A DNA stretch of 63,802 nt from Fonticula alba ATCC 38817 (lineage: Eukaryota; Protista; Nucleariida): NCBI GenBank assembly GCA_000388065.2, contig KB932204.1; one strand, written 5' to 3'. The translations under genes and the position numbers were made by a program. The notes under the pieces were generated by a model. The model worked only from the letters and a program-made list of their open reading frames with translations, was not told the DNA's origin and did no database searches. Below, piece after piece: positions 1 to 59,550 of the stretch. Numbering within the stretch: position 1 is the first letter of the stretch; each line of letters opens with the position of its first letter.

Positions 1-2465
1 TGGTCGTGGGGTGGATCTGAGAACCCCGCGCGCACGCGTGTCTCCCTCCTTTCCTGGGCCACCGAACTGGCCCGGTACTCGGCGGCCATCTGGCTGTCGA
101 TCTACCCCGCATTCCTCCTGAGGAGGAATGCCATTCAAGCATGCCATAATCTTCCACGGGGCCGTTCACGTGGGGATCTTGTAATTCAACCTGTGACTTG
201 GTTTATAGAGATTGGGGGATACCACTACACCTGCTCGCCTCACCTGTGACCTCGAGCAGGTGAGGTTGGTGCCTCGGCCGGGGAGGCGCAAGAAAGAGGG
301 CGGATTCCTGAGGCTCGAGGAATGGAGGGGAGGGGGGGGGGGGCGGTACCGAATTGGACCGACCTGGCCGATGGGCCGCCTCACTTGATGGGTCCGCGCA
401 GGCGGAGTACGTGGAAAGCGGGTGTGGCCGGCTGAGAGAGGCAGCTACGTGCCATGGGGTGTGGTGGGGCTCCGGCCGCAGGGACGCCATGCGCAAGCTG
501 GCAGACGGATGCGCGCCGCTGGCCGGAGGAATAACTGGCTCGGGGCTTGGCCGACTCTGTTGGACGTTACTTTGCCGCCGCGCGGCAGGTGGAGCGAGCG
601 GGGAGGCGGGGAGGGAGGCTGGGTGCCGGGGCCTGTTCTTGGGAAGTGTCCATCGCCCGGGGTGGCGACCCCGCGCGGTGGACGTGTGACATAGCCTGGG
701 CGCGGTGTGCGAGCCAGCGCACTCGGGGGCGAACACAGGACGCGCAAGAATCGGAAGATGCCCCGGGCTCGGGGCCGCGCGGCGCCGGATTTGTCAGCCA
801 GCTGGGAAGGGCCTCCCCCCGAGAGCCGGGGTGCGGAGAGGCCGGGCGGGGAGCCCGGGGGGGGGGGGGGGGCCACCGCCGCCCAGGAGGACAGGGGTCG
901 GGGAAGTGGCTGTCCGAAATGGGGCGGGGGGGGGGCCGGAGCCCGAGGCGCTGCGAGGCCTGCCGGCTCCCGGGGGGCGCGGACGGACACAGGTGCATGG
1001 TAAAAAGAAGGAGGACCGCGGGGGTGGGCTTCTCTCGGGCGCGCGGTCCGGCAGGGACGCGGCGGGCGCGGGCGCATGGTGGGCATGCGCAGGCGCGACT
1101 GCGCACGAGCCGCGATTGGGTTGCGCCCGGGTTTTTTTTTTTTCGTATTTTTGTTGTGTGGACATCCACCTTGGCGGCCGGCGGGGCCGGGCCCGGGCGA
1201 GCAGGGGCAGGAGTGCGCCCGATGCCGCGGCCCCCGCCCCCCCCCCCCCACGCCGGGGAGACCGAGAGAGGGGCAAGCGCGGCGGCCGGCCGGCCGGCAG
1301 GGTGGGCGAGCGGCGGGGTCGCAAACAAACCGGCCGGGGCACGGCCGGCTATCCCCCTTTGCGGGGATCGCCCGGCCAAGGCCACCGTGAAAAGTGGGCG
1401 GCCCCCGGGGCGCGAGGGCGCGCGCCCATAAAAGGCGGCACAGGTGTACGGGGCAGGCGCACTGGGGGGGGGGCGAAGTGCACCGTCATCGGGGGCCCAT
1501 GTGTATCCCTCAGCGGGGGATCCCAGCCCCTGCGCTGGTCCGGCCAGGGGGGGGGAGCCGTGTGGCTTCCGCGTAAAGCCGCGCCGCGGGGGACCTCTCC
1601 CTCGCTGCTTGTGCTCCGGCGGGAGGACACGGTGGGCGGTTCGCCTTGCGCTTCTCTGGGGCCGGGGCCGAAGGCCGCCGCACGGGGAGGGGCCGGGAGA
1701 ATGGGGGCACATTCCACCGGGTGGTGGTGGCGGTGTGGTGCGTGCGGGGCCGTGGGAGCGAGGACTGCTCGGTCGTGAAGCACGGGCCGGTGGGGCGACC
1801 GGAAAGATATGCGCGGGCCGGGCCGGCCGGCTCCGGGCTGGGCGCAGCAGGCGGGCGGGGCGGGGCGGGGGCAGCCCCCGCGCCGACACGGGCGGCCAAG
1901 CCCATGAGTGCCTCGGACTTGGGTGAGGCCGGGCCGGGCAATTTCGAGGCGGATATGCTTCGCGTGTGTTTCGCACTTTTATAAGACATATATATTCGCT
2001 CAATTTGGTCAAATCACCGTCCGACTCCCGTGTGGGAGTGGACCGGCGCCCGGGCAAAGCACCCTGCGCGATGGGCAATGCCCTGGGCGCGATGGGCGCC
2101 CCCCCCCCGCCCCCGCCCCCCCGCCCTGTGGTGTGACCCCCGGCACTGGCTGCAACGCATCCTCCGGCGCCCGGGCCTCGGTCGGGGCGCATGAACGCCG
2201 AGGACAGCCCGGTCCGTCAACTCCCACACCCCGGGCGGGAGGCCTGTTCGCCGCTGGGCCCCCGGCCGTCGGCGAGGGCCGACCCGTCGGGCGGGGGCTG
2301 TGGAACCGGCTCACCGCCGACACACCAATGGATGGGAGCCGGCGGCGCCGAGGGCTCGAGTGCGTACCCCCCCGGCATGGACGTGGGTCCGACCGACCGG
2401 GGGGGGGGGGCGGAGGCGGGGCGGAGGCGGGGCGGTCGTTCCGGCGTGTTTTGGTGGTGCTCACC

Positions 2466-2467
<2 letters not shown>

Positions 2468-2549
<82 letters not shown>
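2468..2549 (+). repeat. G homopolymer (G82)
   Basis: Uninterrupted G run, counted directly. Many shorter G/C runs occur across the window (e.g. 6095-6122). Lengths may be inflated by sequencing or assembly error. Confidence 0.9.
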
Positions 2550-2550
<1 letters not shown>

Positions 2551-5500: not shown

Positions 5501-6091
5501 CCAGCTGTGGTGGCGGGCAGCTCGTCCAAGGCTCGACGCCGCCCCGCACCAGCCGACCACTCTTGGCGCCCCTTCGGCAACTGGGCCCCAAGCGCGCCGA
5601 CGCGTCATGGCGGCCAGCCCGGCTGCCGGCATTCACATCGACCTCGACCAGGGGGGCCTCCGAAGGGGGTGTAATTTCCCGACACCCCGGCCGGGGGACC
5701 AGAGAGCTGGGTAGGGGCAGAGCGGAGGGGGCAGAGCGGAGGGGGGGGGGGGCGGCGGGTGCGCACGGAGCCCGGGTCGTCTGAGCATGAAACCTCCCCC
5801 CGCCGCGCCGCGTCCCCCCTCCGAGGAGGGAACACACCGGCCGGGCAGAGGAGGCCGATCTACCCGGGCGGTCCAGGCGGCCCAGGCCCCTCGGCGCCGG
5901 GCCTCCGGCGTTTTGCCAACCGGCACACTGCCACACTGACACACATGCTCCGGGCCCCGGAACCCCCGGCCACTCGTCCGCCCGCCCCCCCCCCCCGGAG
6001 AAGACACTCCCTCTCCTGTCTGGCCGTCCGGTTCCGATGATGCGCGAGGGGGGCGGCAGGGGGGAAGGGCGGGGGGCGGGGGGTTGGGTGG

Positions 6092-6122
<31 letters not shown>

Positions 6123-6342
6123 AATGAGATCGCCTCAAATGGCCCCGCCCGGGCGGCTCTCGCACCGGGCCCCCTACACACCTCACTTTTCACCCCGCTT
6201 CGACTGGGTCCCCTCTTCTCCTCCTCTTCTTCCGTCAACCTCCCTTCGCCTGCGCCTCGCCCCGCGCCCGACCCCTCTCCGGCCCTCGGTCGTTGGCTTT
6301 TTCTTTCCGACCCCCCCCACCCCCACCTCGCCGTCCTGCACC

Positions 6343-8398
6343 ATGGCCCGGCTTCCGGACCCGCTGGACTCGATGGGCTTCCACCTGGCTGAGAAGCTCG
6401 TCGTCGCTTTTGCCGGGTTGGTGATCGGCGTCTCGCTGATTGCCATCCTCTTCACCCTCTACCACCGAAACTGGCCTCCCATCAAGGCCAAGCAGCCAAG
6501 TCTCATGTTTTTCGCCTGGGTCGGCGGCTCCTGCTTCCTCATCGGCACCCTTGTGCGTGCACCCCGGCGCTGGCCCTGGGCCTCCTCTTTGCCCCTGGCG
6601 GGTCCCGCGAGCCCCTCTGACACATTCGCCTCCCCCGCCGCTCTGTCTCTCCTCCCTGTCGTCACCACGGCCCGCAGTACAGCAACCGTGTGTTCCCGGT
6701 CATCGACGGCTTCAAGGGCTGCGCTTTCTTCCACTACTGGATCCAGGTCCCGATGGGTGTGTCCTTCTACCTGACGGCCTGCTTCTACCGCCTTCTGCGA
6801 GTGCGTGCCCTGCTGTTTTTTCTCCCTCCCTCTCTCTCTCTCTCTCCCGGTCGGTCGGTCTCAATCTCCGACGCATGGGGGGGGGGGGGGGGGCCACAGC
6901 CACATCCTATTCACACAACCGACTAACCTCCTGTCCCCCCCACCCGCCGCTGCCGCCGCCAGATTTACCTCATCTTCAAGGCCCGGCACCTGCACACCAC
7001 CAAGTTCATCATTGCCCTGGTGGCGGCCATCTACCTGCCCTTCATCATCTTCGGCATTGTGTACACCATCTTCGAGTGGGGTGGCCCGGTGGACATTGAC
7101 GGCTACATGATTTGCCTGACCCCCATCCTGGCGCTGATCATCAAGTTCTCGCTGATTGGCATGCAGGTCATCTGCTTGACGACGCTCACTTTCATGACGC
7201 GGTCCATCCGTCATAAGGTCTTCTCCGAGTACAACGCCGTCATGAACTCCATGCTTGTGCACCTGGTGGCCTTCGTGCTGTTCACCATCATCTCGATGCT
7301 CGGCCTGCAGTTCACCCTCTGGGGCCGGTGCCTGCTCGGCTGCCTGGTGTCCGTGGTCATCGTCGTCAACCAGGCGTCCATCATCTATGTGCCGCTGTAC
7401 CATCGGTGCGAATCGGGCCTTGCCATATGGGGCTTTTTCCCCCCTCCTCTTGCTCTTGCTGTCCTTCGCTCCTCCTCCCCGACTCGCAGCCACATGGGCA
7501 TGTCCTTTTGTCCGTGCGCCCGCTCACCTACTTCTTCATCATCTCTCTCTCTGCCCCCCCCCCCCCCCCGGGCCACCTCAACAGCATCGTCGACCCCGAG
7601 GAGTACCTTGCCAAGTTCCAGGCGCAAATCTTCAACCCCTCGCTCGGGGCCAAGTTTGGCTCGCAGTTCTCCGGGTCCTCGCACCCCGGCGCCTCCGGCA
7701 CCGGCTACGATGAGCACGGCCTCACCAGCAGCACTTCCATCTCGGAGACCGGGGCCCCGGAGAAGGGCGGCGACTCGCCCATCATCCCCGGCACCATCAT
7801 CGGTGGCAATGGCATCTCCCACTGCTACGAGCTCAAGTCCCTGGACGGGTCCTCCTCGTACCATCCGCACCCGGATGCCAGCCACCCCGGCCTGCACGAG
7901 GACGACACCGCGTACATGGTGGCCTCGGCGGCCGGCGCCACCGCTCCCGACGGGCAGTCTTACTACCCGAGCGAGGCCGAGTCTGCCGCCGACGTCGAGT
8001 CACTCCCACACCATGGTGCTGATATGGGGTCCGATGTCGAGGCCGATGCCCATGCCGACCCCCACCACCACCACCACCACCACCACTATGTGGACCGCCA
8101 CACTCCCGAGGACGATGTCGAGGCCCGTGTCACCTCCATCCCCCCGGCCGCTGGGGCCTCCTCTTCTTCCTCTGACAAGGGGGAGGAGTCCGACGCCTCG
8201 TCGGTGGACATTCCTCCGCCGAGCATGATTGAGGAGACGCCCGATTCCGCGTCGGCCACTCCCAAGGCCGCTGTCCCGGCTGTCGATGCGCGCCAGTCCA
8301 CCTCATCCCTCGCCGCGTCCACCCGGTCTTCAGTGGCCTCCTTCTCGTCCTCGGTCGCCGGTGGCAGTGATGGGGACAATGACGAGTCGGTGATCTAA
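6343..8398 (+). CDS. Seven-transmembrane receptor, class C (7tm_3/GABA-B-like) TM core, with no large ectodomain and a long acidic Ser/His-rich C-tail
   Basis: join(6343..6552,6678..6800,6963..7405,7585..8398). All introns are GT..AG and phase-consistent; branch point GACTAAC at 6921. Seven hydrophobic segments. Loop motifs HRNWPPIKAKQPSL (after TM1), RLLRIYLIF (end of TM3) and RSIRHKVFSEY (TM5-6 loop) resemble class C GPCR signatures. Confidence 0.72.
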
Positions 8399-8899
8399 GT
8401 CTCCCCCTGCTCGAGCATGTGCCGTCCTCCTCCCCGCACAAAGGCATGCTTCCGTATGCGCATGCATGTGGCCGGGAGTGGTGCTTCTCCCTGCCCGCTC
8501 CCTGCTCTCGCGGGGTCCCATGGCTTGGCATCCCCTCCCTCTCTTTATCGATCGATCGATCGATCTCTCCTTCTCTCCCCCTCTGTGTAGGCGCCTGCAT
8601 CTGCCTGTCCACCGGCAGGGGGAGGGGGAGAAAAAAAAACCCCATCCCTGTCCTTGCCCCCTCTGAAAACCGAAAAGAAAAAAGCGCCCTCTCCCTTGTG
8701 CGGCGCATAGTCGCGCCCTCGGCGCACAATACAGTTTCCCCTTTCCCGCTTGCCCTCGTGTGTTTGTCCGGCGAAAGGGACGCTTCGGTGCCCTGCTCGG
8801 AGTGCCCCCTCCCCCCCCCTGGCCGCTGGTCGTAGTTCCGGCAGCCCTGGCATCTCCTGTGAGTCTTCGTTCGACACACGCACACGCACCGACATGCCC

Positions 8900-8928
8900 G
8901 CACACTCACACACGTACACACGTACACA

Positions 8929-8963
<35 letters not shown>

Positions 8964-8965
8964 AC

Positions 8966-9003
<38 letters not shown>

Positions 9004-9040
9004 ACACACGTACACACATACACACACACACACACATACA
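8900..9040 (+). repeat. Compound (CA)n/(CACGTA) microsatellite downstream of the 7TM gene
   Basis: Read directly from the sequence. Confidence 0.9.
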
Positions 9041-10042
9041 TACGCGGGTAGAGATGTGTGTATGAACCTGGCGGAGCACAGCTGTGTCTCACCAGGCTGC
9101 CCGCCTCCATCGCCCCCGGGACTAGCACAGACGAAGACTGCGGCACGGAGGGGCCTCGGTTGTGCAGAGCCGGATCATCCCCCCTGCAGGCCAGGGAAAG
9201 CACACAGTCTTTCTCCGGCCCGAGGGATGGACGCGCGAGACGGGGCGCAGCCGGCTCCATTGGCACCGGCCGAAGCGAAGGCAGCCCCACAGGTAGCAAA
9301 GCCACCCCCTCCGCGCGAAGATGGTGCGGGAATGTTTCAGTTGCCAATGGTCCGCCCATTGTCTCATCCCCTCCTGGCATGCCGGCGCACGTTTCCCGGC
9401 CGGCACACTAGACACTGACGGGGCCGGGGGGGGGGGGGGAAACCGCGGGAGCCGTCACGGCCGGGGAGGCACACGCACGCACACTCACCCCCCGGCTGGC
9501 AGGCGCGGGTGTGCCGGCCGGGATCCCGAACAGGGGGGGGGAAGGGGCGAATGGGCACCGACGGCAGAGGGAAGTGCGAGGGCCTCATTCGGCGGAGTTG
9601 CTGGCAGATCTGCCTCGGGTGAGGGCTCGGTCCGGCGGGCGGATGCTGCCACCGCGCCCCGAGCAAGCGCCCCTTCGACCGGGACCCGCGCAGCGCGGTG
9701 GTGGCCATCCCTGGGGCGTCCTCGCGTGGGGTGGTTGTTCCGGACGATGGTTGCCCCGCCGATCGCTTTTGGGCGGGCACTTCCGACGACGAGATGCGGT
9801 GCCGTTTGCAAGGGGACGTGCCTGGCGATTGTTTTTTTCTCTGTGTGTTTTTTCCCTTCGACGCCTTTCTGGGAAGGGGGCACAATGAGCACCAACAAAG
9901 GGATGACAGCCACTGGTTTGATTCAGGCCGGTGGGACGGAAATCACCCCTTCCTCCGCTTCTCTCTCTCTCTCTCTCTCTNNNNNNNNNNNNNNNNNNNN
10001 NNNNNNNNNNNNNNNNNNNNNNNCCCCCGCCCCCTCCCCGCC

Positions 10043-12749
10043 ATGCGTGGCCTCATGTCCCTCCTGGCACTAGCCATGGCAGCCCTGCTGGCCGTGGCTT
10101 CGGCCATGGACGGGGCCGTCTCTTCATCCATCGGCGGAGCGTACGACAGCGCCCTGTCGACCGGGCGGCGTGACCGGCTGCGCCCCCGGGCACCGGCCGC
10201 CGACGCTGGCGACCCCCGTGGCGGGGCCTTCCCCACGCACACGCCCCTTTTCGACCAGGTGGACCAGCTCTTTGTGGACAGTCGGCGCCTGTTGCTGGCT
10301 GTCGGCGCGGTGGGTCCCAGCCACGCGCGTATCCTCTTCCAGCCGCTGGCGGTGGATCTCCTGCAAGAGGAGGAGGTCCAGGTGCGGGTGGTGTCGATCA
10401 CCGACCGGCCGAGCCTCCCCGAGCAGGGATCCGCCCTGCCGGCCGATGCCGGCGGGGCCGATGCGGACATCGATCTGGTTGATCCGCTGGCCGTGGAGAC
10501 CGGCGACATGGCCGGCGGGCGCCTGGTCCACGAGACGGTGGTGTCGCTGCGTCATGCGGCCGAGGCGCCGCATGTCCTGCGCCTGGCCGGCCTGCAGCCG
10601 GCCACCCAGTATGCCATTCACTTCCATGTGCCCGGGCCGCTGGACGCCGGGGTCGATGCCGCGGAGGCCATCCGCAGCCGGACCGTGGAGCGTGCCTTCT
10701 TCCGGACCCCGGCTGGGCTGTCGGCCGGGGGTGCCAGCCAGGATGTCGAGGACCCGGAGGCCGAGCCGGCGGTGGCCCCTGGCCGGCAGACGCCTCTGCG
10801 CTTTTTGACGGTCTCCTGCAACCGGCTGAACGAGGACCTGGACACGAGCCTGTGGCGCGAGCTGGCCACCCGGGAGCGCCTGTTCGACGCGTCGCGCGGC
10901 AACATCGACCTCTCCCTGCATCTTGGGGACCAGGTGTATGCGGATGCCATCAGCAAGTCCTTCATGGCGCGCATGACGGCTCCGGCGGCCGGCCTCGGCC
11001 ACCAGGCCCACCTGGAGGCCCTGACGTATCCGGAGCTGCTGGACATCTTCCGGCGTCTGTATCGCGGGGTGTTCGGCCATGCGGCCGTGCAGCCGGTCCT
11101 GCGCCATGGCAGCACCGTCATGATCCCGGACGACCATGAGTTTGTCAACTCCATCTCCCCGGAGCTGGTCCGGCCCGGGGCTGTCATGGCCACGGTCATG
11201 GCCGCCGCCCGGCGGGCCTACCTCGAGTACCAGTACCAATTGACATCCGACGCGTTCGACGAATACGGCCAGTGCGTGAGCATTTGCCCCTGAGCAGCCC
11301 CTCTTTGCTGCCTTTGCTCGGGGCTGCACCCCTCCCTGTGGTGTTGCTCTTTCTTCTCCCCCCCCCCTCTCTCTCTCTCACACACACACACCGTGTCTGT
11401 TCGTCTCCCTCCTTAAATCCTCCCTTCTCCGTGCCCTCTCTCTTTTCTACACACGTTCTTTCTCTTTTCTTCTCTCTCTCTCCCCCCCCCCCCCCCCCAC
11501 CTCCCGCCACCCACCCCCCCCCCGCACAGTGAGTTGCCCCACTTGAATGAAGGTCACTCCATCTACCACTTCTTCCGCTGGGCCGATGTGGCCTTCCTCA
11601 TGCTGGATGTCCGCCTGCACCGGTCGTATGTGGCCGATCCGCCGGAGAGCCCGCTCCTCGGAGCCGAGCAAATGGCTCGCTTCCTGGCCATGATGGAGCA
11701 CATTCGCACCGACCCAACCGTCAGCCACACAGTCATCGCGGCATCCGTGCCGCTGATCTACTCCGGCGAGGAGGCCGCGCGCATCGTGTACGCCATCGAG
11801 GAGGACGTCCTGCCCATGCACCCCTCGGTCCAGGGGGACACCTTCCGCCTGTTGGATGCCATCAGCGACCTCGGCGACTCGGCCAGCGTCATCGGCGGGG
11901 ACATTCACATGTTCATGGAGGCCGAGCTCACCAATACCCGGTGCGCTCTGCCGAGCATGCCGCTTGGTTTTCTTTCTTTCACTCTCTCCCCTTCGTGTTC
12001 TGGGGCCCGTGCTCTCCTCCTGGGTGGCGCTCACACGCACATACGCTGCCCCCGCCCCCCCCCCTTCGTGCCGATCGACTGACCTCCCGGCGCCTCCCTC
12101 GCCCCTTGTCGCGCGTAGAAATGGCAAGAAGGTCCGGCAGTACGCGACGTCCGGCATGACGGTCGGCTCCACGGTCGGCGGGTCGCACACTCGCCTGCTG
12201 CCCTTCTTTATCTTCACCTTCCGGGTGTTGCCCCTGCGTGTGGGCCACTGGACCATGAAGCTGCTCCGTGTGCGTGCCGGCTATTGTCCTTTCTCTGTCG
12301 GAGGGGAGGGGGGGGGCTCCCGATTCCGGGGCCTTGCTGTACTGCCAGCCTCCGCCCTGTCGTCCCCGGGGCCCTTCGTGCTGGTTGGCCTCCTTCCAAT
12401 CACTCGCTCGCCTTGCCTCTCACCTCTTCGCTCCCTCGGCCTCCCCCGTCCTCTTCGCTCCGGGCCCCCGTCGGCCTCTTTGGTCTGATCATTGCAGGGT
12501 GTGGTCCACCAAAACTACCTCATCTTCGACATCAGCCCGCCCACCGGGACCAACGCACAGGTCCGCCTGCGCATCCAGCCCTTCTTCCTGTCGGAGTGGA
12601 CCCTGTCTCAGCGCATCGGCCAGTCCCTCTTCGAGGTGGGCATTCCGCTGGCGACCACCGCCGCCCTCGGCATCCTGGCCATCCTGCTCATGCGCCGCTT
12701 CAACGCCGGGCGCCGCACTGCCACCACCCCTGCCGCACCTTCCAACTAG
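10043..12749 (+). CDS. phoD: PhoD-family alkaline phosphatase with signal peptide and C-terminal transmembrane anchor
   Basis: join(10043..11271,11530..11940,12119..12269,12498..12749). Signal peptide MRGLMSLLALAMAALLAVASA. FN3-like LAGLQPATQYAIHF. PhoD motifs FLTVSCN, LHLGDQVYAD, PDDHE, LDVR, GGDIH. C-terminal TM segment GIPLATTAALGILAILLMRR. Confidence 0.85.
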
Positions 12750-12885
12750 GAGGCATGTGTCGAGAGGGGGGGATCTGCCCCCCATTTATGGAATATGCCG
12801 GGCAAGCCCCCCTCTTGCCCCCGGAGCCGGGCCAGCACACAAAGCGCCCCACTTCTCGGCGCCCAGCCACAGCCCACTCGGCTGC

Positions 12886-12887
<2 letters not shown>

Positions 12888-12940
<53 letters not shown>
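12888..12940 (+). repeat. (GT)n microsatellite in the PhoD 3' region
   Basis: Read directly from the sequence. Confidence 0.9.
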
Positions 12941-12945
<5 letters not shown>

Positions 12946-12960
12946 GTGTGCCGGGACAGA

Positions 12961-12966
12961 AATAAA
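12961..12966 (+). promoter_or_regulatory. Candidate polyadenylation signal AATAAA for PhoD
   Basis: AATAAA about 210 nt after the stop codon in otherwise GC-rich DNA. No transcript evidence. Confidence 0.35.
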
Positions 12967-14231
12967 ACGAACAAAGTCTCCCCTCCTCCCCTGTGTGCCC
13001 GCCGCGAGGGGCCCCGCCCGAGCGAAGTGCGGCCTCCGACGCCCGCCACCACGATCAGACCCCTCCGATGGCAGATGGCCCAGCGACATGGGCTTTGCAT
13101 TCTTGATGTGGTCACGTGCCGATATTGTAACAGTCACGCTCGGTCCTCGTTTCCCAGCGCCGCCCGCCGCCCGCCGTGCGCCTGCGCGTGCGCGCGCAGA
13201 CACACACTGGTTGAGTGCACCGCCGGCATGCGCGAAAAGCCNNNNNNNNNNTGGTTGAGTGCACCGCCGGCATGCGCGAAAAGCCGGTGGGGGAGGGTGG
13301 CAGGCTGGGGGGGGGGGGGGGGGGGGGGGGGCCGGGCGCGCCCCGACGACACCCATGCGTTTCCCTCCTGCCCACTTTCGCGCGGCAGACCACCGGCGAG
13401 AAACACGGACCCGAGATGCTGGCACTAGATTTGACCGGGCCACGCCCATGCCCTGAGGCCACGGGAGAGGGGGGGGGACCACCACCCGGAGGTGTCGCCG
13501 GGCGGCGGGGACCGGCGGCGGCCGGCGTGAAAAGCGGCGTTCCGAGGAAACGGCGCCCACCGGCCTGGGGATGCGATGGCAGCCCACCCCGGTCGGCCGT
13601 TGCCGTGGCGGTTTGGGGATGCTTCGCGGCTCGGCAGCGTGGATGTGCGTGGGGCCGAGCCGAATGCGCACCGGTTCCCTGCGCGCTCCGGCTCTAGCGG
13701 CCCAGCTGGGTGGATGGCGGTCGGACATGGGCGCACGCGAAATACCGCATCCTGCCAGGGCCCCACCCCGCCCCCTCGCCCCCGGGCTCTGCGTGGCCCC
13801 CACCTCGCAGCCCGGTGAGATCTCACGGCAGCTTCTCACGGCGGACACGGGCGCAGACCGGCCCACGCACGCCTCCCCCACGCACGCATATCCGCAGGCC
13901 CTCCGACGAGACCCTCAGTTGATCGGAACGGCCCCTCGGAGTTGGTCGGGCTCTGGCATGGGCTTCGCGGCGCGGCCTTCGACACGGGCCCTTGCTCCGA
14001 TCCGTGCCACTCGAAATGCCGACCCCCCGCCGGCCCCCACTCCCCCCCGGCAAACGTACCAGACCAGCGCGACGGGCATCGAGGACCCGGAACTCGTCGC
14101 TTGCGCGCCCGATGCGCGCTTTTCGGACCCCACTGTCCCGGGCCCCGGCTACTCACCCGTCAGACATGCTGGCCCTCACCCACCCCTTTCCCCCTCCCCT
14201 TTCCCCCCATCCTCCCTCTCCCCAGCACACA

Positions 14232-17200
14232 ATGTCTTCGCCCCCGCCACCTGGCCCCGGGGCTATCTTCTCCCCGACGCATCCCTTTGCCGCCGGGCCG
14301 GGCACCGGCGGGCCAGTCTTCTCGCCGGCGGGCCCCATCGGCACCGTGACCCCGGTCACAACACACCCCTTCTCCACGGGGACCGGTGTCCATGCACCGA
14401 GCAGCTTCGGCATGCATGGCCCGGGTGCCGGTCCGGCCGCGCACCATGCCTCGACGCCTCAGCCGCACCCGGCCCATGGGGCGCCCCCGACGCCGGTCGC
14501 GTCGCCTCCCTCGAGCACCGCGACGTCGGTCGCCACAAGCGGGGCTTCCTCGACGGCCGGGTCGCCGGGCATCCTGGCACCCTCCGAGCCGCGGGCCGAG
14601 CTGTCGCTGCCGAAGCCGGCCGACCCGGGCCCCGGAGCGGTGCCCCCTCCCCCGCCGGCTCTGATCCAAGCCTGCCAGGCCGGGGACATCGACCTGGTGG
14701 AGGAGCTCCTGGCCACCGGGCGGGCACATCCGGCCGACCGGAACCCGGAGGACGGCACCACCGCCCTGCACTGGGCCGCGCTCAATGGCCACCGGCGGAT
14801 TTGCGAGCTGCTGGTGGCTCGCGGCGGCCCGGGCGTGGTCAATGTCTCGGGCGGCAGTGCCGAAATGACTCCCCTGCATTGGGCCGTGCAGCGGGGCCAC
14901 ACGGACGTCGTGCAATACCTGATCGAGCATGCGGGGGCCAATCACCGGCTGACCGATTTGAAGGGCTTCAATGCCCTGCACATGGCCGCGCAATTTGGCC
15001 GGCCCATGATGCTGCTGCTGCTGCTGCGCTTTGGCCTGGCATTGGAGTCGCGCGATCACAACGGCCGCACGCCGCTCATGTGGGCGGCCTATGCGCCGGA
15101 TCCCACCGGGCCCAGCCGACTGGTGGCCACCTCGGCCCAGGACCAGCTCCACTGTTTGGTGGCCCTGCTGCGTCTCGGGGCCGATGTCTATGCCACCGAT
15201 GAGCAGGGATACAGCGCCCTGCATTGGGCGGTCACGCGCGGCCGGCAGAATGCCTGCCGGGTTCTCCTCGAAGCCGGGGCCGATCCCTTCTTGAAGACGG
15301 CCCGGCCGCCGAAGGCCGCCGCCGCTGCCGGAGCCGACCCGCTGCTCTTGCGCTCGGCCATGGAGATCGCCCGGGAGAAGGGCCACGTCGATTGGTTCCA
15401 GAGCCTGACCTCGCGCTACACCTCGCGCCATGTGCTGGCGGCCGCCAGCCCGGAGCGTTCCCCCTCGGCCCGGCCCAGCGGAAAGTCTCTGGCCCAGAGC
15501 AACATCCACATTGGCCATGTGCTGCAGCCGCACCATGCGCGCTACATGTCGCCGGACATGCTGATGGTCTACTGCGTGCCGTATGTCTTCCTCGGGGCGT
15601 GCTTCTACATGTTCACTGCCACCTTCTGGCCGGTGGCCCTGTTGCTGTCCACCGTCCTGGGTTACCTCTTTTGGCTGTTGGTCAAGGTACGATGCCCCTC
15701 GCGGGCCGGGCAAGAGGCAGGCCGGATGTCGCGCCCCGGTGTACTTTTCGAGTTTTCGCACTTTGCCTGCTCGTTCGGGGCTTTCTCCTGCGCCGGGTTG
15801 CTCGCTGGCTCGCTCTCCCTCTCTCCCTCTCTCCCTCTCTCCCATCGCCACACGACTGACTCCAAATGTGACGTACAGGGCCCGGCCACGCGTGTCGGTG
15901 GTCTCCACCGGACGCCGATTTTGATTTCGGTCTTCCATGCGTCACTCGTTTATGACTCCTTTGGCCTGCTGTTCATGGCCAGCGACGGTACGCACTCGCG
16001 CCTGGGTGGGCATTTGCTTCCTCTCTCTTTGATTTTTCGTCCCTGCTTGGCTCGGCTGCCTTCCCCCGGAGCTGCCTCTCCTCTCCGCCGTATTCCGGGC
16101 GCTCGGTACCCATCACGGGGGAAGGTCGTCCTGCTGCCGCATTTCCCGTGCCCCACCCCTCACCGTGAGTCCCGCGCGCGCCTCCCCTTCCAGAATATCC
16201 TCCCTACATTCCGCTGTACATCATCACCACCTTGATCGCCATCACGGGCTTCATCATGTGTGTGAAGGTGTGGTTCTCGGACCCAGGCGTGGTGCCCTTC
16301 CACAATAGCGTGTCGGACATTCTCGCCGTACGACTTGGTGATCTGCTTCTATGCCCTCGGCCATCTCCACCCGCTCACCCTCGTCGCTGCATCTCTCTCT
16401 CTCTGTCTCCCCCCTTTCTCCCCTGCAGGACATTTCTCAGCTGGTTTCCGCGCGGCGCTTCGACCGGCAAAACTACTGCCTCACATGCATGGTGTCGCGG
16501 CCGCAGCGCTCGAAGCACGATCGCGAGACAAACCGCTGTGTCGAGCGCTTCGACCACTACTGCCCGTGGGTGCATAATGTTGTCGGCCGGGACAACCACC
16601 GGCTTTTCCTCATCTTCCTCTTCCTGATCAGCATCTCCATGGTCCTTTATGTCGTTTGTATCTATAAGGGTGCGTTCCCTCTCTCTCTCTCTGTCTCTCC
16701 CCCCCTCTCCCCCTCTCCCGTCCTCCCACATACCACCATCCCTCGGCCCTGCACGTACGCACCTATCTGTACTCACTCGCATATCGGCATGCATGATCGT
16801 GTTCCTCCATATACACGCACACACACACATGCAGTTCTCTCCAACGCGCCCGAAGGCCTCTTCCTGCCGGAGCACACCCCCTCTGCCTGCCCTCTCGGGA
16901 GCCGGGCCTGTGCTGTGGTCAGCCGCAACGCCTTCCTCACGGTGACCGGCGTTTGGACGGGTGTCAACTCCCTCTGGGTTTTGTTGACCTTGGCCACTCA
17001 GTTGAATGCCATCCTGCGCGGGCTGACCGTCAACGAGGTGATCAACTTCAGCCGGTACTCCTATCTTCACCTGGAAGAGCCGGCCTCCGGAGGTGCCGGC
17101 CGCGCTGGTGCCAGCAGCAAGTCCGCTTGCGGGAGTGGCAGCGGGTCGGCCAGCGGCGGTCCCGGTGCCGACCATCACTCGGCCCAGAAGTGCGGCTCGC

Positions 17201-17512
17201 CGGGCCACTCGCATGGCGACCATGGCGACCACTCGCATGGTGACTCCCCGTGCGGGTCGAAGTCCAGCTCCTGGAACAACGCCCTCAATCGAGGCATCTT
17301 GCGGAACCTGTGCGTGTTGTCGCTGGCCGGCGTGGGCTCCGATTTTGTGTCCTTGGGAACTCTTTCTCTTCCTCCCTGGTCATTGCCACTCTGACACCCC
17401 CCTGTACCGGTCTTTCTCCCCCTCCCCTCTCCTCCCGGTACGCAGCATCGGCTTTTTCATGATGTCCACATACGAGACCTCACGCGATGTGGAGCTCGGC
17501 AAGCTGGCGTGA
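14232..17512 (+). CDS. AKR1: Ankyrin-repeat DHHC-family palmitoyltransferase (Akr1/ZDHHC17-like, DHYC variant)
   Basis: join(14232..15686,15879..15987,16194..16327,16429..16669,16835..17309,17446..17512). Ankyrin repeats TTALHWAA, TPLHWAV, NALHMAA, TPLMWAA, SALHWAV. TM segments follow. Cys-rich domain YCLTCMVSRPQRSKHDRETNRCVERFDHYCPWVHNVVG. TTxE-like LTVNE motif. Confidence 0.93.
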
Positions 17513-18024
17513 GAGACGGATGGGGCCGGAGGCCGGGGGCGTGGGGGAAGATTGCTCCCCCCCCCCCCCCCTCCTGAGCCCTGCACACCCTTCATTCGGT
17601 CGCCATCATCCACATGCCAACGGAGTAGACAAGACCGTTGCGCCCCGGGCCGAGGTTCAAATTTCAAAAATATATCTGTTGCAGATTGTTGCCCAACCGT
17701 GCAGGGGGGGGGGGGGGGGCGGGGAGGGGGGACGCGAAAGGCCAGGTCAGGGTGGTGGCCCAGGGCGCAGGGTGCCGGAGACTCGAGAGGATGCACAATG
17801 GGTTTGGGAACCCAGGTGGGATGGCCGTTTAGATCACCCCTCTCCACTCCTCCAGTTCCCTCAGCTGGTCTTCTTCATTGCACTCCGCTTCGCTGCTCCC
17901 CTCCCCCCCCCCCTCCTTCTTGCTCCTCCCCTTCGGCCCTCTCGCCTGCATCCCCCTCCGCCGTTGGCCGTCATCTCTCCCCTCGCCCCCGGGTTACGGC
18001 GCTTCCTCGCCCCATCGCTTGGCC

Positions 18025-19958
18025 ATGGACATCGAGCGCATCGTGCGCCAGCTTCAACTGCACGTCCGTGACCGGGCGCCGCAGATCGTCTCCAAGGCGC
18101 AAGAGGTTTTTCGCCTGTCCTCGACGGCCAAGTTCAGCGGCAGCGCGGTGGCCTCGCGCCCCGTGGCTTGTGTGCAGATTGCCTGTGACATGTGCGCCCC
18201 TGCATGCGCGTGTGTGCTTGCCATCTGGAGCGGGGGGGAGGGGTGTTCCTTGACGGGCGGGGCTGCTGTTGGGGCTTTCTTTCTTTTTTTTTATTTTCCA
18301 CTGGCTGATATTGACCTCCACTGTCTCTTCCACCCGGCATGAAACATGCAGCTTGGACGAGCCGATCGATAAGTCGGCGGCCACCCGGATTTCAGGATCC
18401 TCATCCAAGATCTACAACCGGCTGATAGCCCGCATTAGGGACTTGGTTGGGGCATCGTGCGTTCGCCAGCCTGGCCGTCGTCACATCTGTGCCCGCTTGG
18501 ACTCCTCGATGGGACTGACCTGTGTGCCCCTCCAACCCCAAGGCGAACGCTCCGTCTGAGCGACCTGTGTGTCCGATATAACGCGCCCCACTTACTGGAG
18601 CGAGCCAATGAGATCTTGCAGTTTTTGAACCAGTCGTCCACCGGGCCGGCGGCCCCGTCGACAAGTGAGGATACCCCGGCCCCGGCCGCTGTCGGCAGCT
18701 ACTCCGAGGAAAGCTCGGCCGTGACTTCCTCCCGGGTGGCGGCCTCTTTCCTGGCGGCCTGCCGCTTTCCGGGGCCGGACCACCAGCCTGTGAGCGTGTC
18801 CCGGTGGTCGGTTGAGCGCATTTGCGATGTGGATCGCCGTGTTTTCGGCTCGGTGTGTGCCTCTTTTTTTTTTCGTGCCGGCGACCGGCCAGCCCGTGTG
18901 CCATTGGCTTTACTAACCCGTTGTCTCTGCGCTTGACGGGGGGGCGGGGCAAAACCCCCAACCAGACCCTCGATGCGGCCTTCTCTGTGGCCGATCACCT
19001 GGACCAGATGGCTCGGCTGGCGGCAGCCGGGACGAGTGCCCCGACCGCCACGCCGGCCCCGGACGCCGGGTCTGGGGACCTGGCCGCGGGGGGCGCCCCA
19101 GCACGTGCACCGGCCTCGGCCCCTGCGCCGGAACCTGCGTCGCGCGCGGACATGCGCGAGCGTGAGCTGGCCGCCCAGCTGCGCATGGATGTGGGGCTAA
19201 CGCCGGCGCCCTCGAACACCGCCCTGTCGGCCAAGGGCCCCTCGGAGGCTGGGGCCCCCGGCTCCGGTCCGACCGATGACCCGACCACGGCTGGCATGTT
19301 GGCCAGCCTCACCGGGGCCGGTGTCCCGCTGGCTGCCAGGACGGCGGCCGCGCTGGCCGCCGAGCAGGAACGCCTTCGGTCGCTGGTGGCCACGCAGCTG
19401 GCTCCGCCACCAGCCCGGCGCGGCCGTGGTCGCCCTCCCGGGTCCCTGAACAAGAAGCANNNNNNNNNNNNNNNNNNNNNNNNNNNNNNNNNNNNNNNNN
19501 NNNNNNNNNNNNNGCTGGCTGCCAGGACGGCGGCCGCGCTGGCCGCCGAGCAGGAACGCCTTCGGTCGCTGGTGGCCACGCAGCTGGCTCCGCCACCAGC
19601 CCGGCGCGGCCGTGGTCGCCCTCCCGGGTCCCTGAACAAGAAGCCCTCGCTGCGACTGCAGCAACAGCAGCAGCAGGAGCGCGCCATCCGATCGGGCGCC
19701 GCCCTGGCCGCGGCGCTGATGGCCAACCTGCCGGACGGCTGGTACATCCGGAGTACTCTGCCCCGGCGTCGGCCCCTCGGGGCACCTGCACCTCCGGCAG
19801 ATCCGCTGAATGGCCGCATTGAGCGAGCCTACCTGGCTTGGTATGCGTCGGTGGTCCATGGTCCGCCGGCTGATCTTGACGACCCCGCCGGCACACACGC
19901 GTCTCCCAAGCCGGAGCTGCCGGGACCGACCTTGGAGGCCATCCCGCCAGGGAGGTAG
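18025..19958 (+). CDS. ORC6: Origin recognition complex subunit 6 with extended C-terminus containing an AT-hook
   Basis: join(18025..18191,18352..18456,18543..18852,18966..19958), spanning N-gap 19460-19513. KAQEVFRLS..RPVACVQIAC, DKSAATRISG, LSDLCVRYN..ERANEIL and VAASFLAAC follow the TFIIB-like ORC6 pattern. Branch points GACTGAC (18513) and TACTAAC (18911). Confidence 0.8.
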
Positions 19959-20137
19959 CCCCTTGTCGGTCCACCGTGCTCCTCCTCCCTCTCCCGGAAT
20001 AGACTTCGCCGGCAGCGAAGAACTTCACACTGGCGGCCCCTGGCTGAGCGTTGCCTTTTCTTCGACACACCGGGGTGGTGTATTTTTGTGGCATGTATGC
20101 CGCGAAAGGGAGCGAAGGGGGGGGGGGGGGGGGGGGG

Positions 20138-23100
20138 TCACCGCTCGAAGTGCTCGACAACCAGACCAATGAGCTGGGGCTTGGTCATGCGGGGGTGCTC
20201 CACGCCGATGCTTTCGAGGAATTGCTTGAGCATGGGCACGGTTAGCTTGCTCAGCGTGCCGGCGCGCCAGTGCTCCTCCACCGATGCGGGCTCCGCCGTG
20301 GCGCGGGTCCTTTTGGCCGTGGGGGCGGCGTCGACAGCGGCGGCGCGCCGGCGCCCGGCCCCGGTCGCAGGCGGCACCTGTAGCGAGGCATTGGCCAGCT
20401 GGTACTGGTCCAGGTGCTTGCTCAGGGTACGTAGTGCCGGACCGGCCAGCTGCTCGATGGCCTCCAGGGCCGGGCGTGTGCTATCATGCGTAACCTCGAC
20501 GGATGTCTGGCCCAGGGCCAGTGCATGCAAAGTCGAGTAGAGCAGAGTATTGGCTGCCGGCATCGAGCGAGAGTCAGTCGACAGCCCAACCGGGAGGAGG
20601 GCAGGGGAGGGGGGGGGGGGCGGGGAACACTCCGGCGGCACGTCAAGTAGGATGGCAAAAGGGGGGGGGGGGTACGCACCAGGATTGGGGAAGTCATCAA
20701 TGGAGAAGGTCCCCTGGATGAGGCTGTCAGCCACCGTGGCCACGGCCGACGCGACGGCCTCCTCCTCTATGGGTAGGGGGGAAAGGGGAGGAATCAGAAT
20801 ACGATCGGGAGGGGGGAAAGAAGCCGGGCCAGGAGGCGCAATTCCCAGGCAGACGCCAGACGTACCGGGCACCGGGGCCACGGCCTGCACCGGGCGGACA
20901 TCCTCCAGATAAGGCAGAGATGCAAAGTAGAAGCCACACCGGTCGGCTGGCAGGCCTCCGGGCGGGGCCGGGATTAGCAGCGCCAGCGCCGGGGGGGCTG
21001 TGCGTGTCGAATACAGCACCACGGCAGCCAGGCCACGGGCAGCCGTGCGCCGGAGCAGGGCCGCCAGTACCGCATCGGACCCGGCCACGTCGGCCTCGCA
21101 GCCGGTCAGGAACTGGGTGGCCCGGTACAACAGTGACATGTCCACCTCGGCCAATGGCCGGAAGCCAAGCAACGCCAGCCCGGTGCCCAGCTGCCCCGAG
21201 CCAACCAGGGGGGCCTGGATGCCTGCCGGGGCGGAGGCCTTGGCCGGGCCGCGCGCATGTCCGGCATAGTGCGCCAGTAGGACGGACCGCAAAGGCCGGT
21301 CCACGTACTGGGTGATTCCCGGCCCGGGGATCAGCAGCCGCGACCCGGGGTCCGTTTCGTCGGATCCGACGACCAGGGTCCGCTGGGCATCCCGCGCGGC
21401 CACCACCTCGCGGACTCCCGTGTCAGGGTTCTTTTGTTGTTGGCGGTGGTGTTGTGGGACATGTCCATTGGGCTTTGTCAGTGGAATGCCTCTTCCATGG
21501 CCAGGCGTGAATTCGGTACAAGCACGGCGCAAGCACGGCGCAAGCACGGCGCAAGCACGGCGCCCGGGTGGAGGCCAGTCAACACGCACCGTGATATGAT
21601 ATCGACTCTGATTGACGACCGGCTCATTGGTTCGCATGTCCACATACTCATAGGTTGGCTTCCGACCTGGCGTCAACAACGGGTATCTGCATGTCCGGCG
21701 GGTGGAGGGGGGGGGGATTTTACGGGGAGGTGGATGGGTGTGATTTGCGAGAACCGCCAGGGGAAGCAACGCGCATGGAGCCGAATGCGCATGGCAGCCA
21801 TGTTGCAAAGAGGAAGGGGAGGGGGGGGGGGGCAAATAGTGTGAACATGGGGCAAAGGGGGCAGTGGTCAGGCAAAAATGCTTTGTAGGCGTACAGCTGC
21901 ACCGAAATGCATACCGACGGTGACAGAACCAACGGCAGCGGCGGGGAGAATCCCTTGCGGCCCTGGCGCTGGCGAATGGCCACCAGCATGCGTTCGATAC
22001 GCTCCGGCACGGAGACCATGCCCGGAGCGCCGGGCTCCGGCCCGACTGGTGCCTCGAGGAAGGTCCCATAGAAGGCGCCGAAGTCAAAGGCCTCGCCCCC
22101 GGGCGGGTCGAGTGGCATCAATTCCAGGGCGATGCCCAGCTGGGCCAGATCGGCTGCTCGGATGGCTGCCTCGCGATCGAGACGAGCCTCTTGAGCCCGG
22201 TCGCCCACCGGCGCATGCGGCCGAGGATCATTCGTGAAGAGGAGCACCCGCTGCCGGCCGAGACGCCGGGTGGCCGATGCCCGGCTGAACAGCCGCCCGC
22301 AGGCATCCAGCACCCGGGCAAGCGGCATGCACCCTGGCTGGGATCCCTGCCCGGCCTCGGTCAGTGGGGGGAACTCCTGTTCGAAGCGAGACCGGGCCCC
22401 GGTGCCCGGGGCACACCCAGAACCGGCGGTGCTGGCCTGAAGGAGCGAGAGAAAGGCCCCGCCAAGCATGGAGGAGCCGGACTGCGCCAGGAGACTGTCC
22501 CCAGCGAGGCGAGCAGGGCTGGACAGCGCATCGCCAGGGGCCGGCAGCTTTGCCGGCCGCTCGGCCCCCTCGTCGGTCAACAGGGACTCCAGTCGGCGAA
22601 TGCGCGTCACATCCGCCACATCCAGGTCCAGCAAGACCGCGGCACCGGAATCCGCGCCAACATCCTCCGAGGACCGGGCGCCTTCCGGGGCTTGTGTATT
22701 GAAAAGAAGGACCCCAGCCAGGTCATTGGGTGCCGAGGAAATGCTGTCGCGAATGACCCACAGAGCGCAGAGAAGCGCGTTGTGGGCTCCCGCCGGGGTG
22801 CCCATGCGCATGGTTGGGCCGCAGTCGACCGCAAAGATGGTCGCGTCAGCTCGATTGAGCTGTGTGCCGGCAGCCAGGGAGCGGGGGGAGAGGGGTCAGT
22901 TGCCTGGCAAGCATCATGCCGACCCCCAGTAGGGCAAGATCAGAGGGGGTGTACCTCGCTGGCGGAACGCCCCTCGCCCGGGAGCTCGTCAGCGTCATCG
23001 TCCGCATCACCGGTCTGAAAGCTGGTGGCCACATTTTCCACCCGAAGGACAGAATAGAAGCTGGCTCTGCTGGGGGCCGTGGCGTCGGAGGTTTGGATAG

Positions 23101-27314: not shown

Positions 27315-28501
27315 GCTCTGCGGCTGCCGCGTGGCCAGCCCCTTTCTCCGAGAGGGGCGGCAGGGGGCGAGGAGGGCGTGTAGGAGAGGGGGGGGGGGGG
27401 AACCGCCAAATCAGCGGTATGTCAATCGGCCGGGAGCAGATCAGGCGAACAGGGGCACTGCGGGCAGGAGAGGCGAAGCTTCATGGGTTTGTGGATATCG
27501 ATGGAGATGTGGGCTGTACCGACAGCCCGGTGGCTCGGGGGTGGCTCTTATCTGTTGTCGGGGCCGGATGCTGGTGCGGGCTGGGAGGGAGGGAGGGGGG
27601 GTGGCACCGCAGGCCGCGGCATTGCGGGCTAAGTTGCGCCCTACCGACTGGGCTCCGCCCCCGCGCGAACAGAACGTTGGCGCCTCAAGGGGGAAGGGGC
27701 GGAGGGGCCGGGAAAGGGGGCATGGCTGCCGGGGGCATGCTCGATCCCGGACGGCGGCGATCTGGAGCACCAGCACCTGGGCATGTCTGGCAATCTCGCG
27801 CCCCCTGTGTCTGCCAAACGCCTGCCGGTTGCCTTTGTCCGTCTCCCCCGCCGGCGGGTTCATGTCCGACCCTGGCATGCCGAGTCCCGCTCCGACACTG
27901 CGCATGGTCCTGGGGGCGGGGAATTCGAGCAAAAGCCCCCCGGGAGCCGGGTATGGTTGTTTTTTTTTTCGCCACACCATCATGCCCCCAGTGGATGAGT
28001 GTTTGGCCGCGGCCGTCGGGCTCCGGTGGAAAACGCCCCGCCCGGCAAGGCGCATCCGCGGGGACGAGCGGCGCGCGCACGCCGCACGGCCTCTCCCTCC
28101 ATCTTCTTCATTTCCTGCGCCCCATTTGCCGATCTTGTCTCACCATTCCAGACAAATACCCGGGGCAGGAGGGGCCCGAGCGGGGCAGGAGGCGCGAGGG
28201 GCCAGGACATCTCTCGCCCCCAGGGTGGAAGCTCGGTCGAGGAGACCACCCGCGACGCCAGGTACAAGGGCATCCAGCTCCGGGGCACAGTGGCCACGAA
28301 ACAAACAGCCATGAAGTCACATTGACACCGATGGCCCTCGATCGTTAACCGACACACACGCTTCTCACAACCCTGCACACACTTGCATGCACTTGCAGAC
28401 ACTTGCCTCGCAAGCGGAGGGCAAGACAAGAGAAAAAAAAAAGGAAGAAAAATGGGTCACCCCTGGGGTTCACACGCGCTCCGGCCAGCGGGTTTGCCAA
28501 C

Positions 28502-46336: not shown

Positions 46337-46371
<35 letters not shown>

Positions 46372-59540: not shown

Positions 59541-59550
59541 NNNNNNNNNN

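What the first reader, a model, noticed from the sequence alone, without database searches (positions are those of the whole stretch)
18966..19958. ORC6 carries a canonical AT-hook: a possible independent route to origin recognition
Seen: after the TFIIB-like ORC6 core, exon 4 encodes a long extension containing PARRGRGRPPGSLNKK (19416-19457, repeated at 19602-19643), a textbook R-G-R-P AT-hook. Established: fission yeast targets ORC to AT-rich origins through AT-hooks on Orc4. I know of no AT-hook on Orc6. Inference: in this very GC-rich genome, Orc6 may steer ORC to rare AT-rich islands (e.g. 1970-2015, 28430-28455, 46290-46350). That would be convergent on S. pombe but through a different subunit.
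Basis: partly seen in the sequence, partly recalled or inferred. Interest (0 to 1): 0.75.

Follow-up and report, generated by a model that had tools for sequence, protein, structure and literature searches.

The report
Orc6 with one AT-hook, not two
The gene is a genuine ORC6 of the amoeba Fonticula alba with a textbook AT-hook DNA-binding motif in its long floppy linker, unseen in 143 other Orc6 proteins, but the "second copy" is an assembly artefact and a role in choosing origins is untested.

Summary
The window is Fonticula alba. The gene at 18025-19958(+) is H696_02913, a four-exon ORC6 orthologue. Support: Pfam ORC6 at 40 bits, human ORC6 as the best sequence and fold match in the PDB, and a two-cyclin-box model with pLDDT 89.

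Gap test: contigs from four runs (source DNA, an independent soil metagenome and two cDNA-like runs) all join 19327 directly to 19514. So the gap and the second motif copy come from an unmerged contig overlap. The true protein has 462 aa and ONE hook, PARRGRGRPPGSLNKK.

The cDNA-like contigs show GT..AG joints for exons 2-3-4, so the extension belongs to the ORC6 transcript.

The hook has the RGRP core plus a GS-x-NK tail, as in type-I AT-hooks. It lies in a predicted unstructured stretch of a roughly 200-aa Ala/Pro-rich linker, about 70 aa before a predicted helix carrying the Orc6 C-terminal Y-x-x-W motif.

None of 143 other Orc6 homologues has an [RK]GRP core, and no paper found reports one. 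AT-hooks are known on Orc4, Orc2 and Orc1. Human Orc6 binds AT-rich DNA partly through a basic linker patch.

A single hook is most likely an auxiliary tether. Origin steering is untested. The scan noted the same stretch once before (s1-066183).

The parts
18025..18191 (+). ORC6 exon 1 (start codon at 18025); first half of the first TFIIB-like/cyclin-box domain
   Evidence: Alone it hits Pfam ORC6 at E 4e-4. The joined model equals P0001 exactly. The exon 1-2 joint is not covered by the cDNA-like contigs, but the Pfam match runs unbroken across it (residues 15-88).
18352..18456 (+). ORC6 exon 2
   Evidence: GT..AG joint 18456/18543 in cDNA-like contigs of X11 and X13.
18543..18852 (+). ORC6 exon 3; end of domain 1, an acidic/Ser loop and most of the second cyclin-box domain
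   Evidence: Joints 18456/18543 and 18851(+1)/18965(+1) in X11 and X13. AF2 model helices 96-122 and 149-199.
18966..19958 (+). ORC6 exon 4 as assembled, stop codon included. It encodes the last helix of domain 2, the disordered linker, the AT-hook and the C-terminal helix. The true exon is 186 nt shorter.
   Evidence: One X11 contig covers 18699-18851, 18965-19327 and 19514-19916. The corrected CDS of 1389 nt gives 462 aa.
19410..19457 (+). AT-hook PARRGRGRPPGSLNKK (residues 343-358 of the corrected protein); the single real copy, equally well placed at 19596-19643
   Evidence: Sequence. RGRP core plus GS-x-NK tail as in type-I hooks. Two of the protein's eight lysines lie here. Predicted unstructured between two helices.
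19460..19513 (.). Assembly gap (54 N) that does not exist in the organism's DNA
   Evidence: All four runs skip 19328-19513 with nothing between.
19514..19644 (+). Artefactual second copy of 19328-19458 (131 nt, 100% identical), an unmerged contig overlap
   Evidence: Base 19459 (A) against 19645 (C) is the only difference, at the contig end.
19815..19862 (+). Candidate Orc3-binding C-terminal helix RIERAYLAWYASVVHG (residues 416-431 of the corrected protein)
   Evidence: The [YF]xxW[KR]xx[aliphatic] motif is found in 100 of 143 homologues. The Fonticula version lies inside a predicted helix. Pattern p about 3e-4, but the profile test is weak: 19 of 2000 shuffles score as high.

Best explanation
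This is the Fonticula alba orthologue of ORC6. It has two TFIIB-like cyclin-box domains (residues 1 to about 215), an unusually long Ala/Pro-rich disordered linker of about 200 aa, and a short C-terminal helix with the Y-x-x-W signature that in animals docks Orc6 onto Orc3. The linker carries one AT-hook, not two as assembled: an RGRP core, arginines before it and a GS-x-NKK tail after it. Most likely reading (inferred, not shown): the R-G-R segment inserts into the minor groove of short A/T tracts. It would then add an ATP-independent DNA or chromatin tether to the DNA binding that Orc6's second TFIIB-like domain already provides. In that role it would do the job of the K/R patch that most other Orc6 proteins carry just after domain 2 and that Fonticula lacks. 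With a single hook it should bias or stabilise ORC binding near A/T tracts rather than define origins by itself.
For: ORC6 identity: Pfam PF05460 at 40.4 bits against a cut-off of 22.2. phmmer against the PDB gives human ORC6 8s0b_F/6kvg_A at E about 1.6e-6 and Drosophila Orc6 7jgr_F. The AF2 model of residues 1-200 has pLDDT 89; its best PDB fold match is human ORC6 8s0b_F (TM 0.60/0.67), followed by TFIIB cores. The nearest Atlas clusters are ORC6. One transcript: spliced contigs link exons 2-3-4. One hook. Hook quality: RGRP core plus GSLNK tail, compared with the type-I consensus RGRP...GSKNK. Expectation by composition is 5e-8. The same 13 residues RGRGRPPGSLNKK recur as the third of three hook-like repeats in an unrelated metagenomic protein, P0002, so it behaves as a module. 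It lies in a predicted coil between helices. Precedent for the mechanism: human Orc6 binds AT-rich DNA through its middle domain plus the linker patch R198-K201, and Drosophila Orc6 prefers poly(dA) (PMC7641730). Of 19 diverse Orc6 proteins with the C-terminal motif, 12 have a K/R cluster, at positions 191-248 (nine of them between 191 and 216); Fonticula has none there. AT-hooks tether other ORC subunits: SpOrc4, ScOrc2, and sponge, echinoderm and S. pombe Orc1.
Against: No binding data exist. The Pfam AT_hook model gives only 9.6 bits (E 1.2, cut-off 17.4) even with the artefactual second copy included, and nothing for one copy alone. Conservation could not be assessed: the only near relatives found are the same species, and the closest other Orc6 (34% identity) has no hook. 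Bare RGRP or RPRP cores are common in translations of this GC-rich DNA (81 six-frame hits in the window). The C-terminal helix match is statistically weak. A single AT-hook binds weakly by itself (my own knowledge of HMGA biochemistry).
Confidence: 0.55

Rival explanations
1. The motif is a lineage-specific by-product of a fast-evolving, GC-driven low-complexity linker and has no selected function.
For: The linker is 23% Ala and 12% Pro. RGRP-like cores abound in six-frame translations of this window. There is a single copy, below the Pfam threshold. No conservation could be shown. None of 143 other Orc6 proteins needs one. An earlier unchecked note reports an AT-hook inside an insert of another Fonticula protein (s1-066835), which hints that such motifs are scattered in this proteome.
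Against: The extended match (basic residues, RGRP, GS-x-NKK) is expected 5e-8 times by composition. The tail uses two of only eight lysines, encoded by AAC AAG AAG in a 74% G+C exon. The identical 13-mer occurs in a three-hook array in P0002.
Confidence: 0.2
2. The RG-rich basic stretch works mainly as something other than an AT-DNA reader: a nuclear localisation signal, an arginine-methylation site, or a binder of structured G-rich RNA or DNA.
For: It is the densest basic element in a protein that lacks the usual K/R patch after domain 2, and that patch could double as an NLS. AT-hooks of EBNA1 and HMGA1 recruit ORC through G-rich RNA (review PMC11354804). The genome is 67% G+C with long G runs beside genes.
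Against: The proline after RGR and the GS-x-NK tail are AT-hook features specifically, not features of RGG boxes or classical NLSs. Nothing here tests RNA binding or import.
Confidence: 0.15
3. One reading: the hook is the main determinant that directs ORC to rare AT-rich islands and so specifies origins, in convergence with S. pombe Orc4.
For: AT-rich islands are few: seven stretches with at least 70% A+T over 40 nt in 64 kb. A/T runs of 10 or more bases are over-represented (14 seen, fewer than 1 expected from composition). Orc6 is a DNA-binding subunit in animals.
Against: There is one hook, against nine in SpOrc4. Short A/T tracts that could take one hook occur about every 860 bp. There are no origin data. 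Other Fonticula ORC subunits were not examined.
Confidence: 0.1
4. The tandem duplication is real, giving two hooks, and short-read contigs collapsed it.
For: The assembly and the GenBank protein P0001 carry two copies.
Against: Four independent contig sets, including one from another sample and two from cDNA, run straight through with no branch, no loose end at 19459 or 19514 and no letters between. The copies are 100% identical and abut the gap exactly. Two other gaps in this window show the same flank overlap.
Confidence: 0.03

Closest known systems
Metazoan ORC6 (human ORC6, PDB 8S0B chain F and 6KVG; Drosophila Orc6, 7JGR chain F)
   Same: Two TFIIB-like cyclin-box domains, a flexible linker and a C-terminal Y-x-x-W helix. 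DNA binding with AT preference partly through a basic element in the linker.
   Different: 462 aa against about 250. The linker is about 200 aa against about 40-67. Fonticula has no K/R patch right after domain 2; it has a bona fide RGRP AT-hook about 130 aa further on. The C-terminal helix has Tyr where others have Lys or Arg.
S. pombe Orc4 N-terminal AT-hook domain
   Same: AT-hook(s) in a disordered extension of an ORC subunit, proposed to act as an ATP-independent tether to AT-rich DNA.
   Different: Nine hooks on Orc4 against one on Orc6. The S. pombe genome and origins are AT-rich; here the genome is 67% G+C and its origins are unknown.
Single or degenerate AT-hooks in other ORC subunits (S. 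cerevisiae and C. albicans Orc2; sponge, echinoderm and S. pombe Orc1 IDRs)
   Same: One or a few hooks embedded in an ORC subunit IDR. S. pombe Orc1 shares the string RGRGRP.
   Different: A different subunit. No Orc6 example was found in the papers or in 143 homologues.
Type-I AT-hook of plant AHL proteins (the second hook of HMGA1 is similar, from my memory)
   Same: RGRP core followed by Gly-Ser-x-Asn-Lys.
   Different: Leu replaces the first Lys of GSKNK. The host protein is unrelated.

Membership tests
ORC6 | First TFIIB-like/cyclin-box domain (Pfam PF05460) | tested here: met
   40.4 bits, E 3.8e-10, cut-off 22.2, residues 15-88. Human ORC6 at E 1.6e-6.
ORC6 | Second cyclin-box domain (PF21913) | tested here: met
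   Pfam alone is weak (E 0.18). The AF2 model (pLDDT 89) has both helical repeats, and its best PDB match is human ORC6 8s0b_F over 187 columns, TM 0.60/0.67. The Atlas structure match to an ORC6 cluster has TM 0.61. The domain-2 alignment holds across 30 homologues.
ORC6 | C-terminal helix that binds Orc3 (conserved Tyr, Y232 in human, then Trp) | tested here: inconclusive
   YLAWYASVV lies at residues 421-429 inside a predicted helix. The pattern appears in the last 60 aa of shuffles 3.4e-4 of the time, but a profile built from 19 homologues scores it no better than 19 of 2000 shuffles.
ORC6 | Assembly with Orc1-5 and a role in MCM loading | not testable with these tools
   Needs biochemistry or genetics.
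AT-hook (PF02178 / SMART AT_hook) | Core Arg-Gly-Arg-Pro | tested here: met
   RGRP at corrected residues 348-351.
AT-hook (PF02178 / SMART AT_hook) | Basic residues on both sides; type-I tail GSKNK | tested here: met
   RR-G-RGRP-P-GSLNK-K: four of the five tail residues match the type-I consensus quoted in PMC12430185.
AT-hook (PF02178 / SMART AT_hook) | Score above Pfam's gathering threshold | tested here: not met
   9.6 bits, E 1.2, against 17.4, for a piece holding both assembled copies. A single copy gives no hit. P0002 with three hook-like repeats also gives none, so the 13-position model has little power here.
AT-hook (PF02178 / SMART AT_hook) | Sits in an extended, disordered segment | tested here: met
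   No secondary structure and pLDDT about 50-60 between two helices in the AF2 model of P0001:360-506. The Atlas model of the whole protein has pLDDT 0.56.
AT-hook (PF02178 / SMART AT_hook) | Binds the minor groove of A/T tracts | not testable with these tools
   Needs EMSA, NMR or footprinting.
SpOrc4-type origin-recognition module | Array of multiple AT-hooks sufficient for origin binding | tested here: not met
   One hook after removal of the assembly artefact.

The most novel reading that the evidence does not exclude
In Fonticula alba, whose genome is 67% G+C, the Orc6 linker AT-hook is the element that concentrates ORC at the sparse long A/T tracts and so sets where replication starts. 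That would be an origin-selection route through the smallest and least conserved ORC subunit, arisen independently of S. pombe Orc4.
Probability: 0.1. Interest if true: 0.7.

Novelty: new variant of a known kind. Interest (0 to 1): 0.35.

Why it matters
How ORC finds DNA differs widely among eukaryotes. AT-hooks in disordered tails are one recurring solution, known on Orc4, Orc2 and Orc1. An AT-hook on Orc6 would add a fourth subunit to that list. It occurs in a lineage sister to fungi with an extreme GC genome, and it replaces the generic basic patch that animal Orc6 uses to contact AT-rich DNA. That supports the view that ORC's tethering elements are interchangeable modules that move between subunits. 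Practically, the public protein H696_02913 is 44 residues too long: its CDS skips the gap, so it carries a false 43-residue repeat plus one junction residue. In the assembly the artefact is 186 nt, or 62 codons. Domain counts taken from that record are wrong.

Tried and rejected
1. The search for homologous proteins with a full-length-first alignment (A2), meant to survey long Orc6 proteins of 278-885 aa, returned only the query; low-complexity words filled the 8000 candidates. The same tool with the N-terminal alignment A1 gave 94 hits, but almost all were vertebrate or plant, so it added little diversity.
2. Pfam scans of single exons and of the hook peptide alone gave nothing for the AT-hook.
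3. A profile of the C-terminal helix built from 85 mostly vertebrate segments scored Fonticula below shuffles. A profile from 19 diverse sequences was only marginal. I therefore do not claim the helix as proven.
4. A second RGRGRP string on the minus strand near 12448 is not in any ORF of 80 aa or more, so I dropped it.
5. The contig carrying P0002 (L001) has no informative neighbours.
6. Notes of this scan searched by 'origin recognition complex' returned nothing further.
7. Thomae et al. 2008 (HMGA1a-ORC) is not held in the library.

Full report
What is there. The window is 66.8% G+C and holds nine assembly gaps. A word search with the exon-4 reading frame returned the annotated protein H696_02913 of Fonticula alba (P0001, 506 aa). 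The model 18025-18191, 18352-18456, 18543-18852, 18966-19459 and 19514-19958 translates to P0001 exactly, and all three introns are GT..AG.

The gap was tested first, as asked. The 131 nt at 19328-19458 are 100% identical to 19514-19644. One copy ends one base before the gap and the other starts at the first base after it. I laid Logan contigs from four runs on 17900-20100: the probable source DNA (X1), an independent soil metagenome (X2) and two 2012 runs of the same organism that behave as cDNA (X11, X13). Every run has a contig that passes from 19327 directly to 19514. The contigs skip 186 nt, 131 letters fit on either side, there are no letters between, and there is no loose end at 19459 or 19514. 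The joint appears in DNA as well as in cDNA-like runs, so it is not splicing. The gap and one copy are an unmerged contig overlap. Two other gaps in the window (13242-13251 and 59541-59550) show the same kind of flank overlap. The real exon 4 is 186 nt shorter, the frame is unaffected, and the protein has 462 aa with a single hook.

One transcript. X11 and X13 have no depth in intron 3. They carry joints 18456/18543 and 18851(+1)/18965(+1) with GT..AG ends. One X13 contig links exons 2, 3 and 4, and one X11 contig runs from exon 3 to 19916. The exon 1-2 joint is not covered. However, the Pfam ORC6 match runs unbroken across it (residues 15-88). The AF2 model also places a helix (residues 189-199) across the exon 3-4 joint at residue 194/195.

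It is ORC6.
- Pfam PF05460 scores 40.4 bits against a cut-off of 22.2.
- phmmer against the PDB finds only Orc6 chains: human 8s0b_F and 6kvg_A at E about 1.6e-6, and Drosophila 7jgr_F.
- phmmer of residues 1-200 against 1.84 billion representatives found 46 other proteins at E up to 1e-3. Those I looked up are Orc6 of Capsaspora, a dictyostelid, an amoebozoan, two early fungi and oomycetes.
- An AF2 model of residues 1-200 built with 30 homologues has pLDDT 89 and two helical repeats. Its best PDB fold match is human ORC6 (TM 0.60/0.67), followed by TFIIB cores.
- The Atlas agrees.

The C-terminus. In 100 of 143 homologues a motif [YF]xxW[KR]xx[aliphatic] lies near the C-terminus. In human Orc6 this is helix alpha-11 (residues 231-242), which binds Orc3 and holds the Meier-Gorlin residue Y232 (PMC7641730). 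Fonticula has RIERAYLAWYASVVHG at corrected residues 416-431 (19815-19862), inside a predicted helix. It is most like the oomycete versions (RYLAWRQSVL). The pattern occurs in the last 60 aa of only 3.4e-4 of shuffles. A small profile, however, scores it no better than 19 of 2000 shuffles. I call this suggestive, not proven.

The hook. PARRGRGRPPGSLNKK lies at corrected residues 343-358. It has the RGRP core, two arginines before it and GSLNK-K after it. The AHL literature defines type-I AT-hooks by RGRP followed by GSKNK (PMC12430185).
- By the protein's composition, a bare RGRP is expected 0.027 times and the core with a GS.NK tail 5e-8 times.
- The bare core is not rare in this genome: 81 R[GP]RP hits occur in the six-frame translation of the window. 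The tail is what carries the weight.
- Two of the protein's eight lysines are in that tail, encoded AAC AAG AAG in an exon of 74% G+C.
- The same 13 residues end a series of three hook-like repeats in an unrelated metagenomic protein, P0002.
- Pfam's 13-position AT_hook model gives only 9.6 bits (cut-off 17.4) for a piece with both assembled copies and nothing for one copy. It also misses P0002. This formal test is not met, but it has little power.
- In an AF2 model of the true C-terminal 147 residues, the hook lies in a coil between helices. The surrounding linker is 23% Ala and 12% Pro.

Is it unusual for Orc6? None of the 143 other Orc6 homologues fetched (46 diverse representatives, 94 mostly vertebrate or plant proteins, and cluster members) has an [RK]GRP, RPRGR or GRGRP string. 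Only four contain GRP at all, none in a basic context. Of 30 papers that mention both Orc6 and AT-hook, I listed 20 and read five. They place hooks on S. pombe Orc4, S. cerevisiae and C. albicans Orc2, and sponge, echinoderm and S. pombe Orc1, never on Orc6. The AT-hook review likewise names only Orc4 among ORC subunits. The survey is modest in size, and my attempt to widen it to long Orc6 proteins failed.

How it most likely works. What is known: Drosophila and human Orc6 bind DNA by themselves with a preference for AT-rich or poly(dA) DNA. In human Orc6 the DNA-binding unit is the second TFIIB-like domain plus a flexible linker patch, R198-K201, that covers four A-T pairs (PMC7641730). What is shown here: 12 of 19 diverse Orc6 proteins have a K/R cluster in the linker, nine of them at positions 191-216. 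Fonticula has none there, and the densest basic element of its linker is the hook. What is inferred: the hook is Fonticula's version of the linker DNA contact, made specific for narrow A/T minor grooves. It would help tether ORC, which is held through the C-terminal helix about 70 residues away, next to A/T tracts. One hook gives weak affinity by itself, and A/T runs of 6 or more bases occur 74 times in 64 kb. I therefore expect a bias or stabilisation rather than origin definition. Long A/T runs of 10 or more bases are over-represented (14 seen, fewer than 1 expected from composition) and could be preferred sites. No origin data exist for this organism.

Rivals. The last is nearly excluded. 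The others need experiments.

Verdict. The finding is a new variant of a known kind, an AT-hook-bearing ORC subunit. It is of moderate interest, and it corrects the public gene model. The scan had noted the same stretch once before in an overlapping window (s1-066183).

Noticed in passing
window 13242-13251 and 59541-59550: Two more assembly gaps whose right flank repeats the end of the left flank (34 nt identical; about 92 nt nearly identical). They are probably the same unmerged-overlap artefact, so features read across them may be falsely duplicated.
   Followed up: partly
window 20138-22087 (- strand): Convergent neighbour with a Ku70/Ku80 beta-barrel domain (Pfam PF02735, E 4.5e-10) and a SAP-like C-terminal tail. 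Its 3' end lies about 180 nt from the ORC6 stop codon, across a G run.
   Followed up: partly
window 16351-17394 (+ strand): Upstream neighbour is a DHHC palmitoyltransferase (PF01529, E 7e-26).
   Followed up: partly
window 17560-17575, 17705-17722, 20118-20138, 20618-20632: Long homopolymer C or G runs (13-21 nt) sit in the intergenic and intronic DNA around ORC6. The only A/T-rich patches nearby are 17651-17693, just upstream of the gene, and 18273-18318 in intron 1.
   Followed up: no
L001:379-1071 (P0002, ENA metagenome contig ERZ508546 NODE_8783): An unannotated 230-aa protein with three hook-like repeats, the last identical to the Fonticula 13-mer RGRGRPPGSLNKK. It has no Pfam hit, and its source organism is unknown.
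   Followed up: partly
window 18000-19459 in public runs: Near-identical DNA is present in a soil metagenome (three base changes and a 2-nt deletion in intron 3 at 18864), in a sediment metagenome, and in 2025 runs labelled with another organism. F. alba or a very close relative therefore occurs in environmental samples and in other samples.
   Followed up: partly
P0012 (Capsaspora owczarzaki Orc6) residues about 210-220: The linker basic patch reads PRGRKRR, an RGR core without the following proline. It looks like a half-way form between a plain K/R patch and an AT-hook.
   Followed up: no
   Followed up: no
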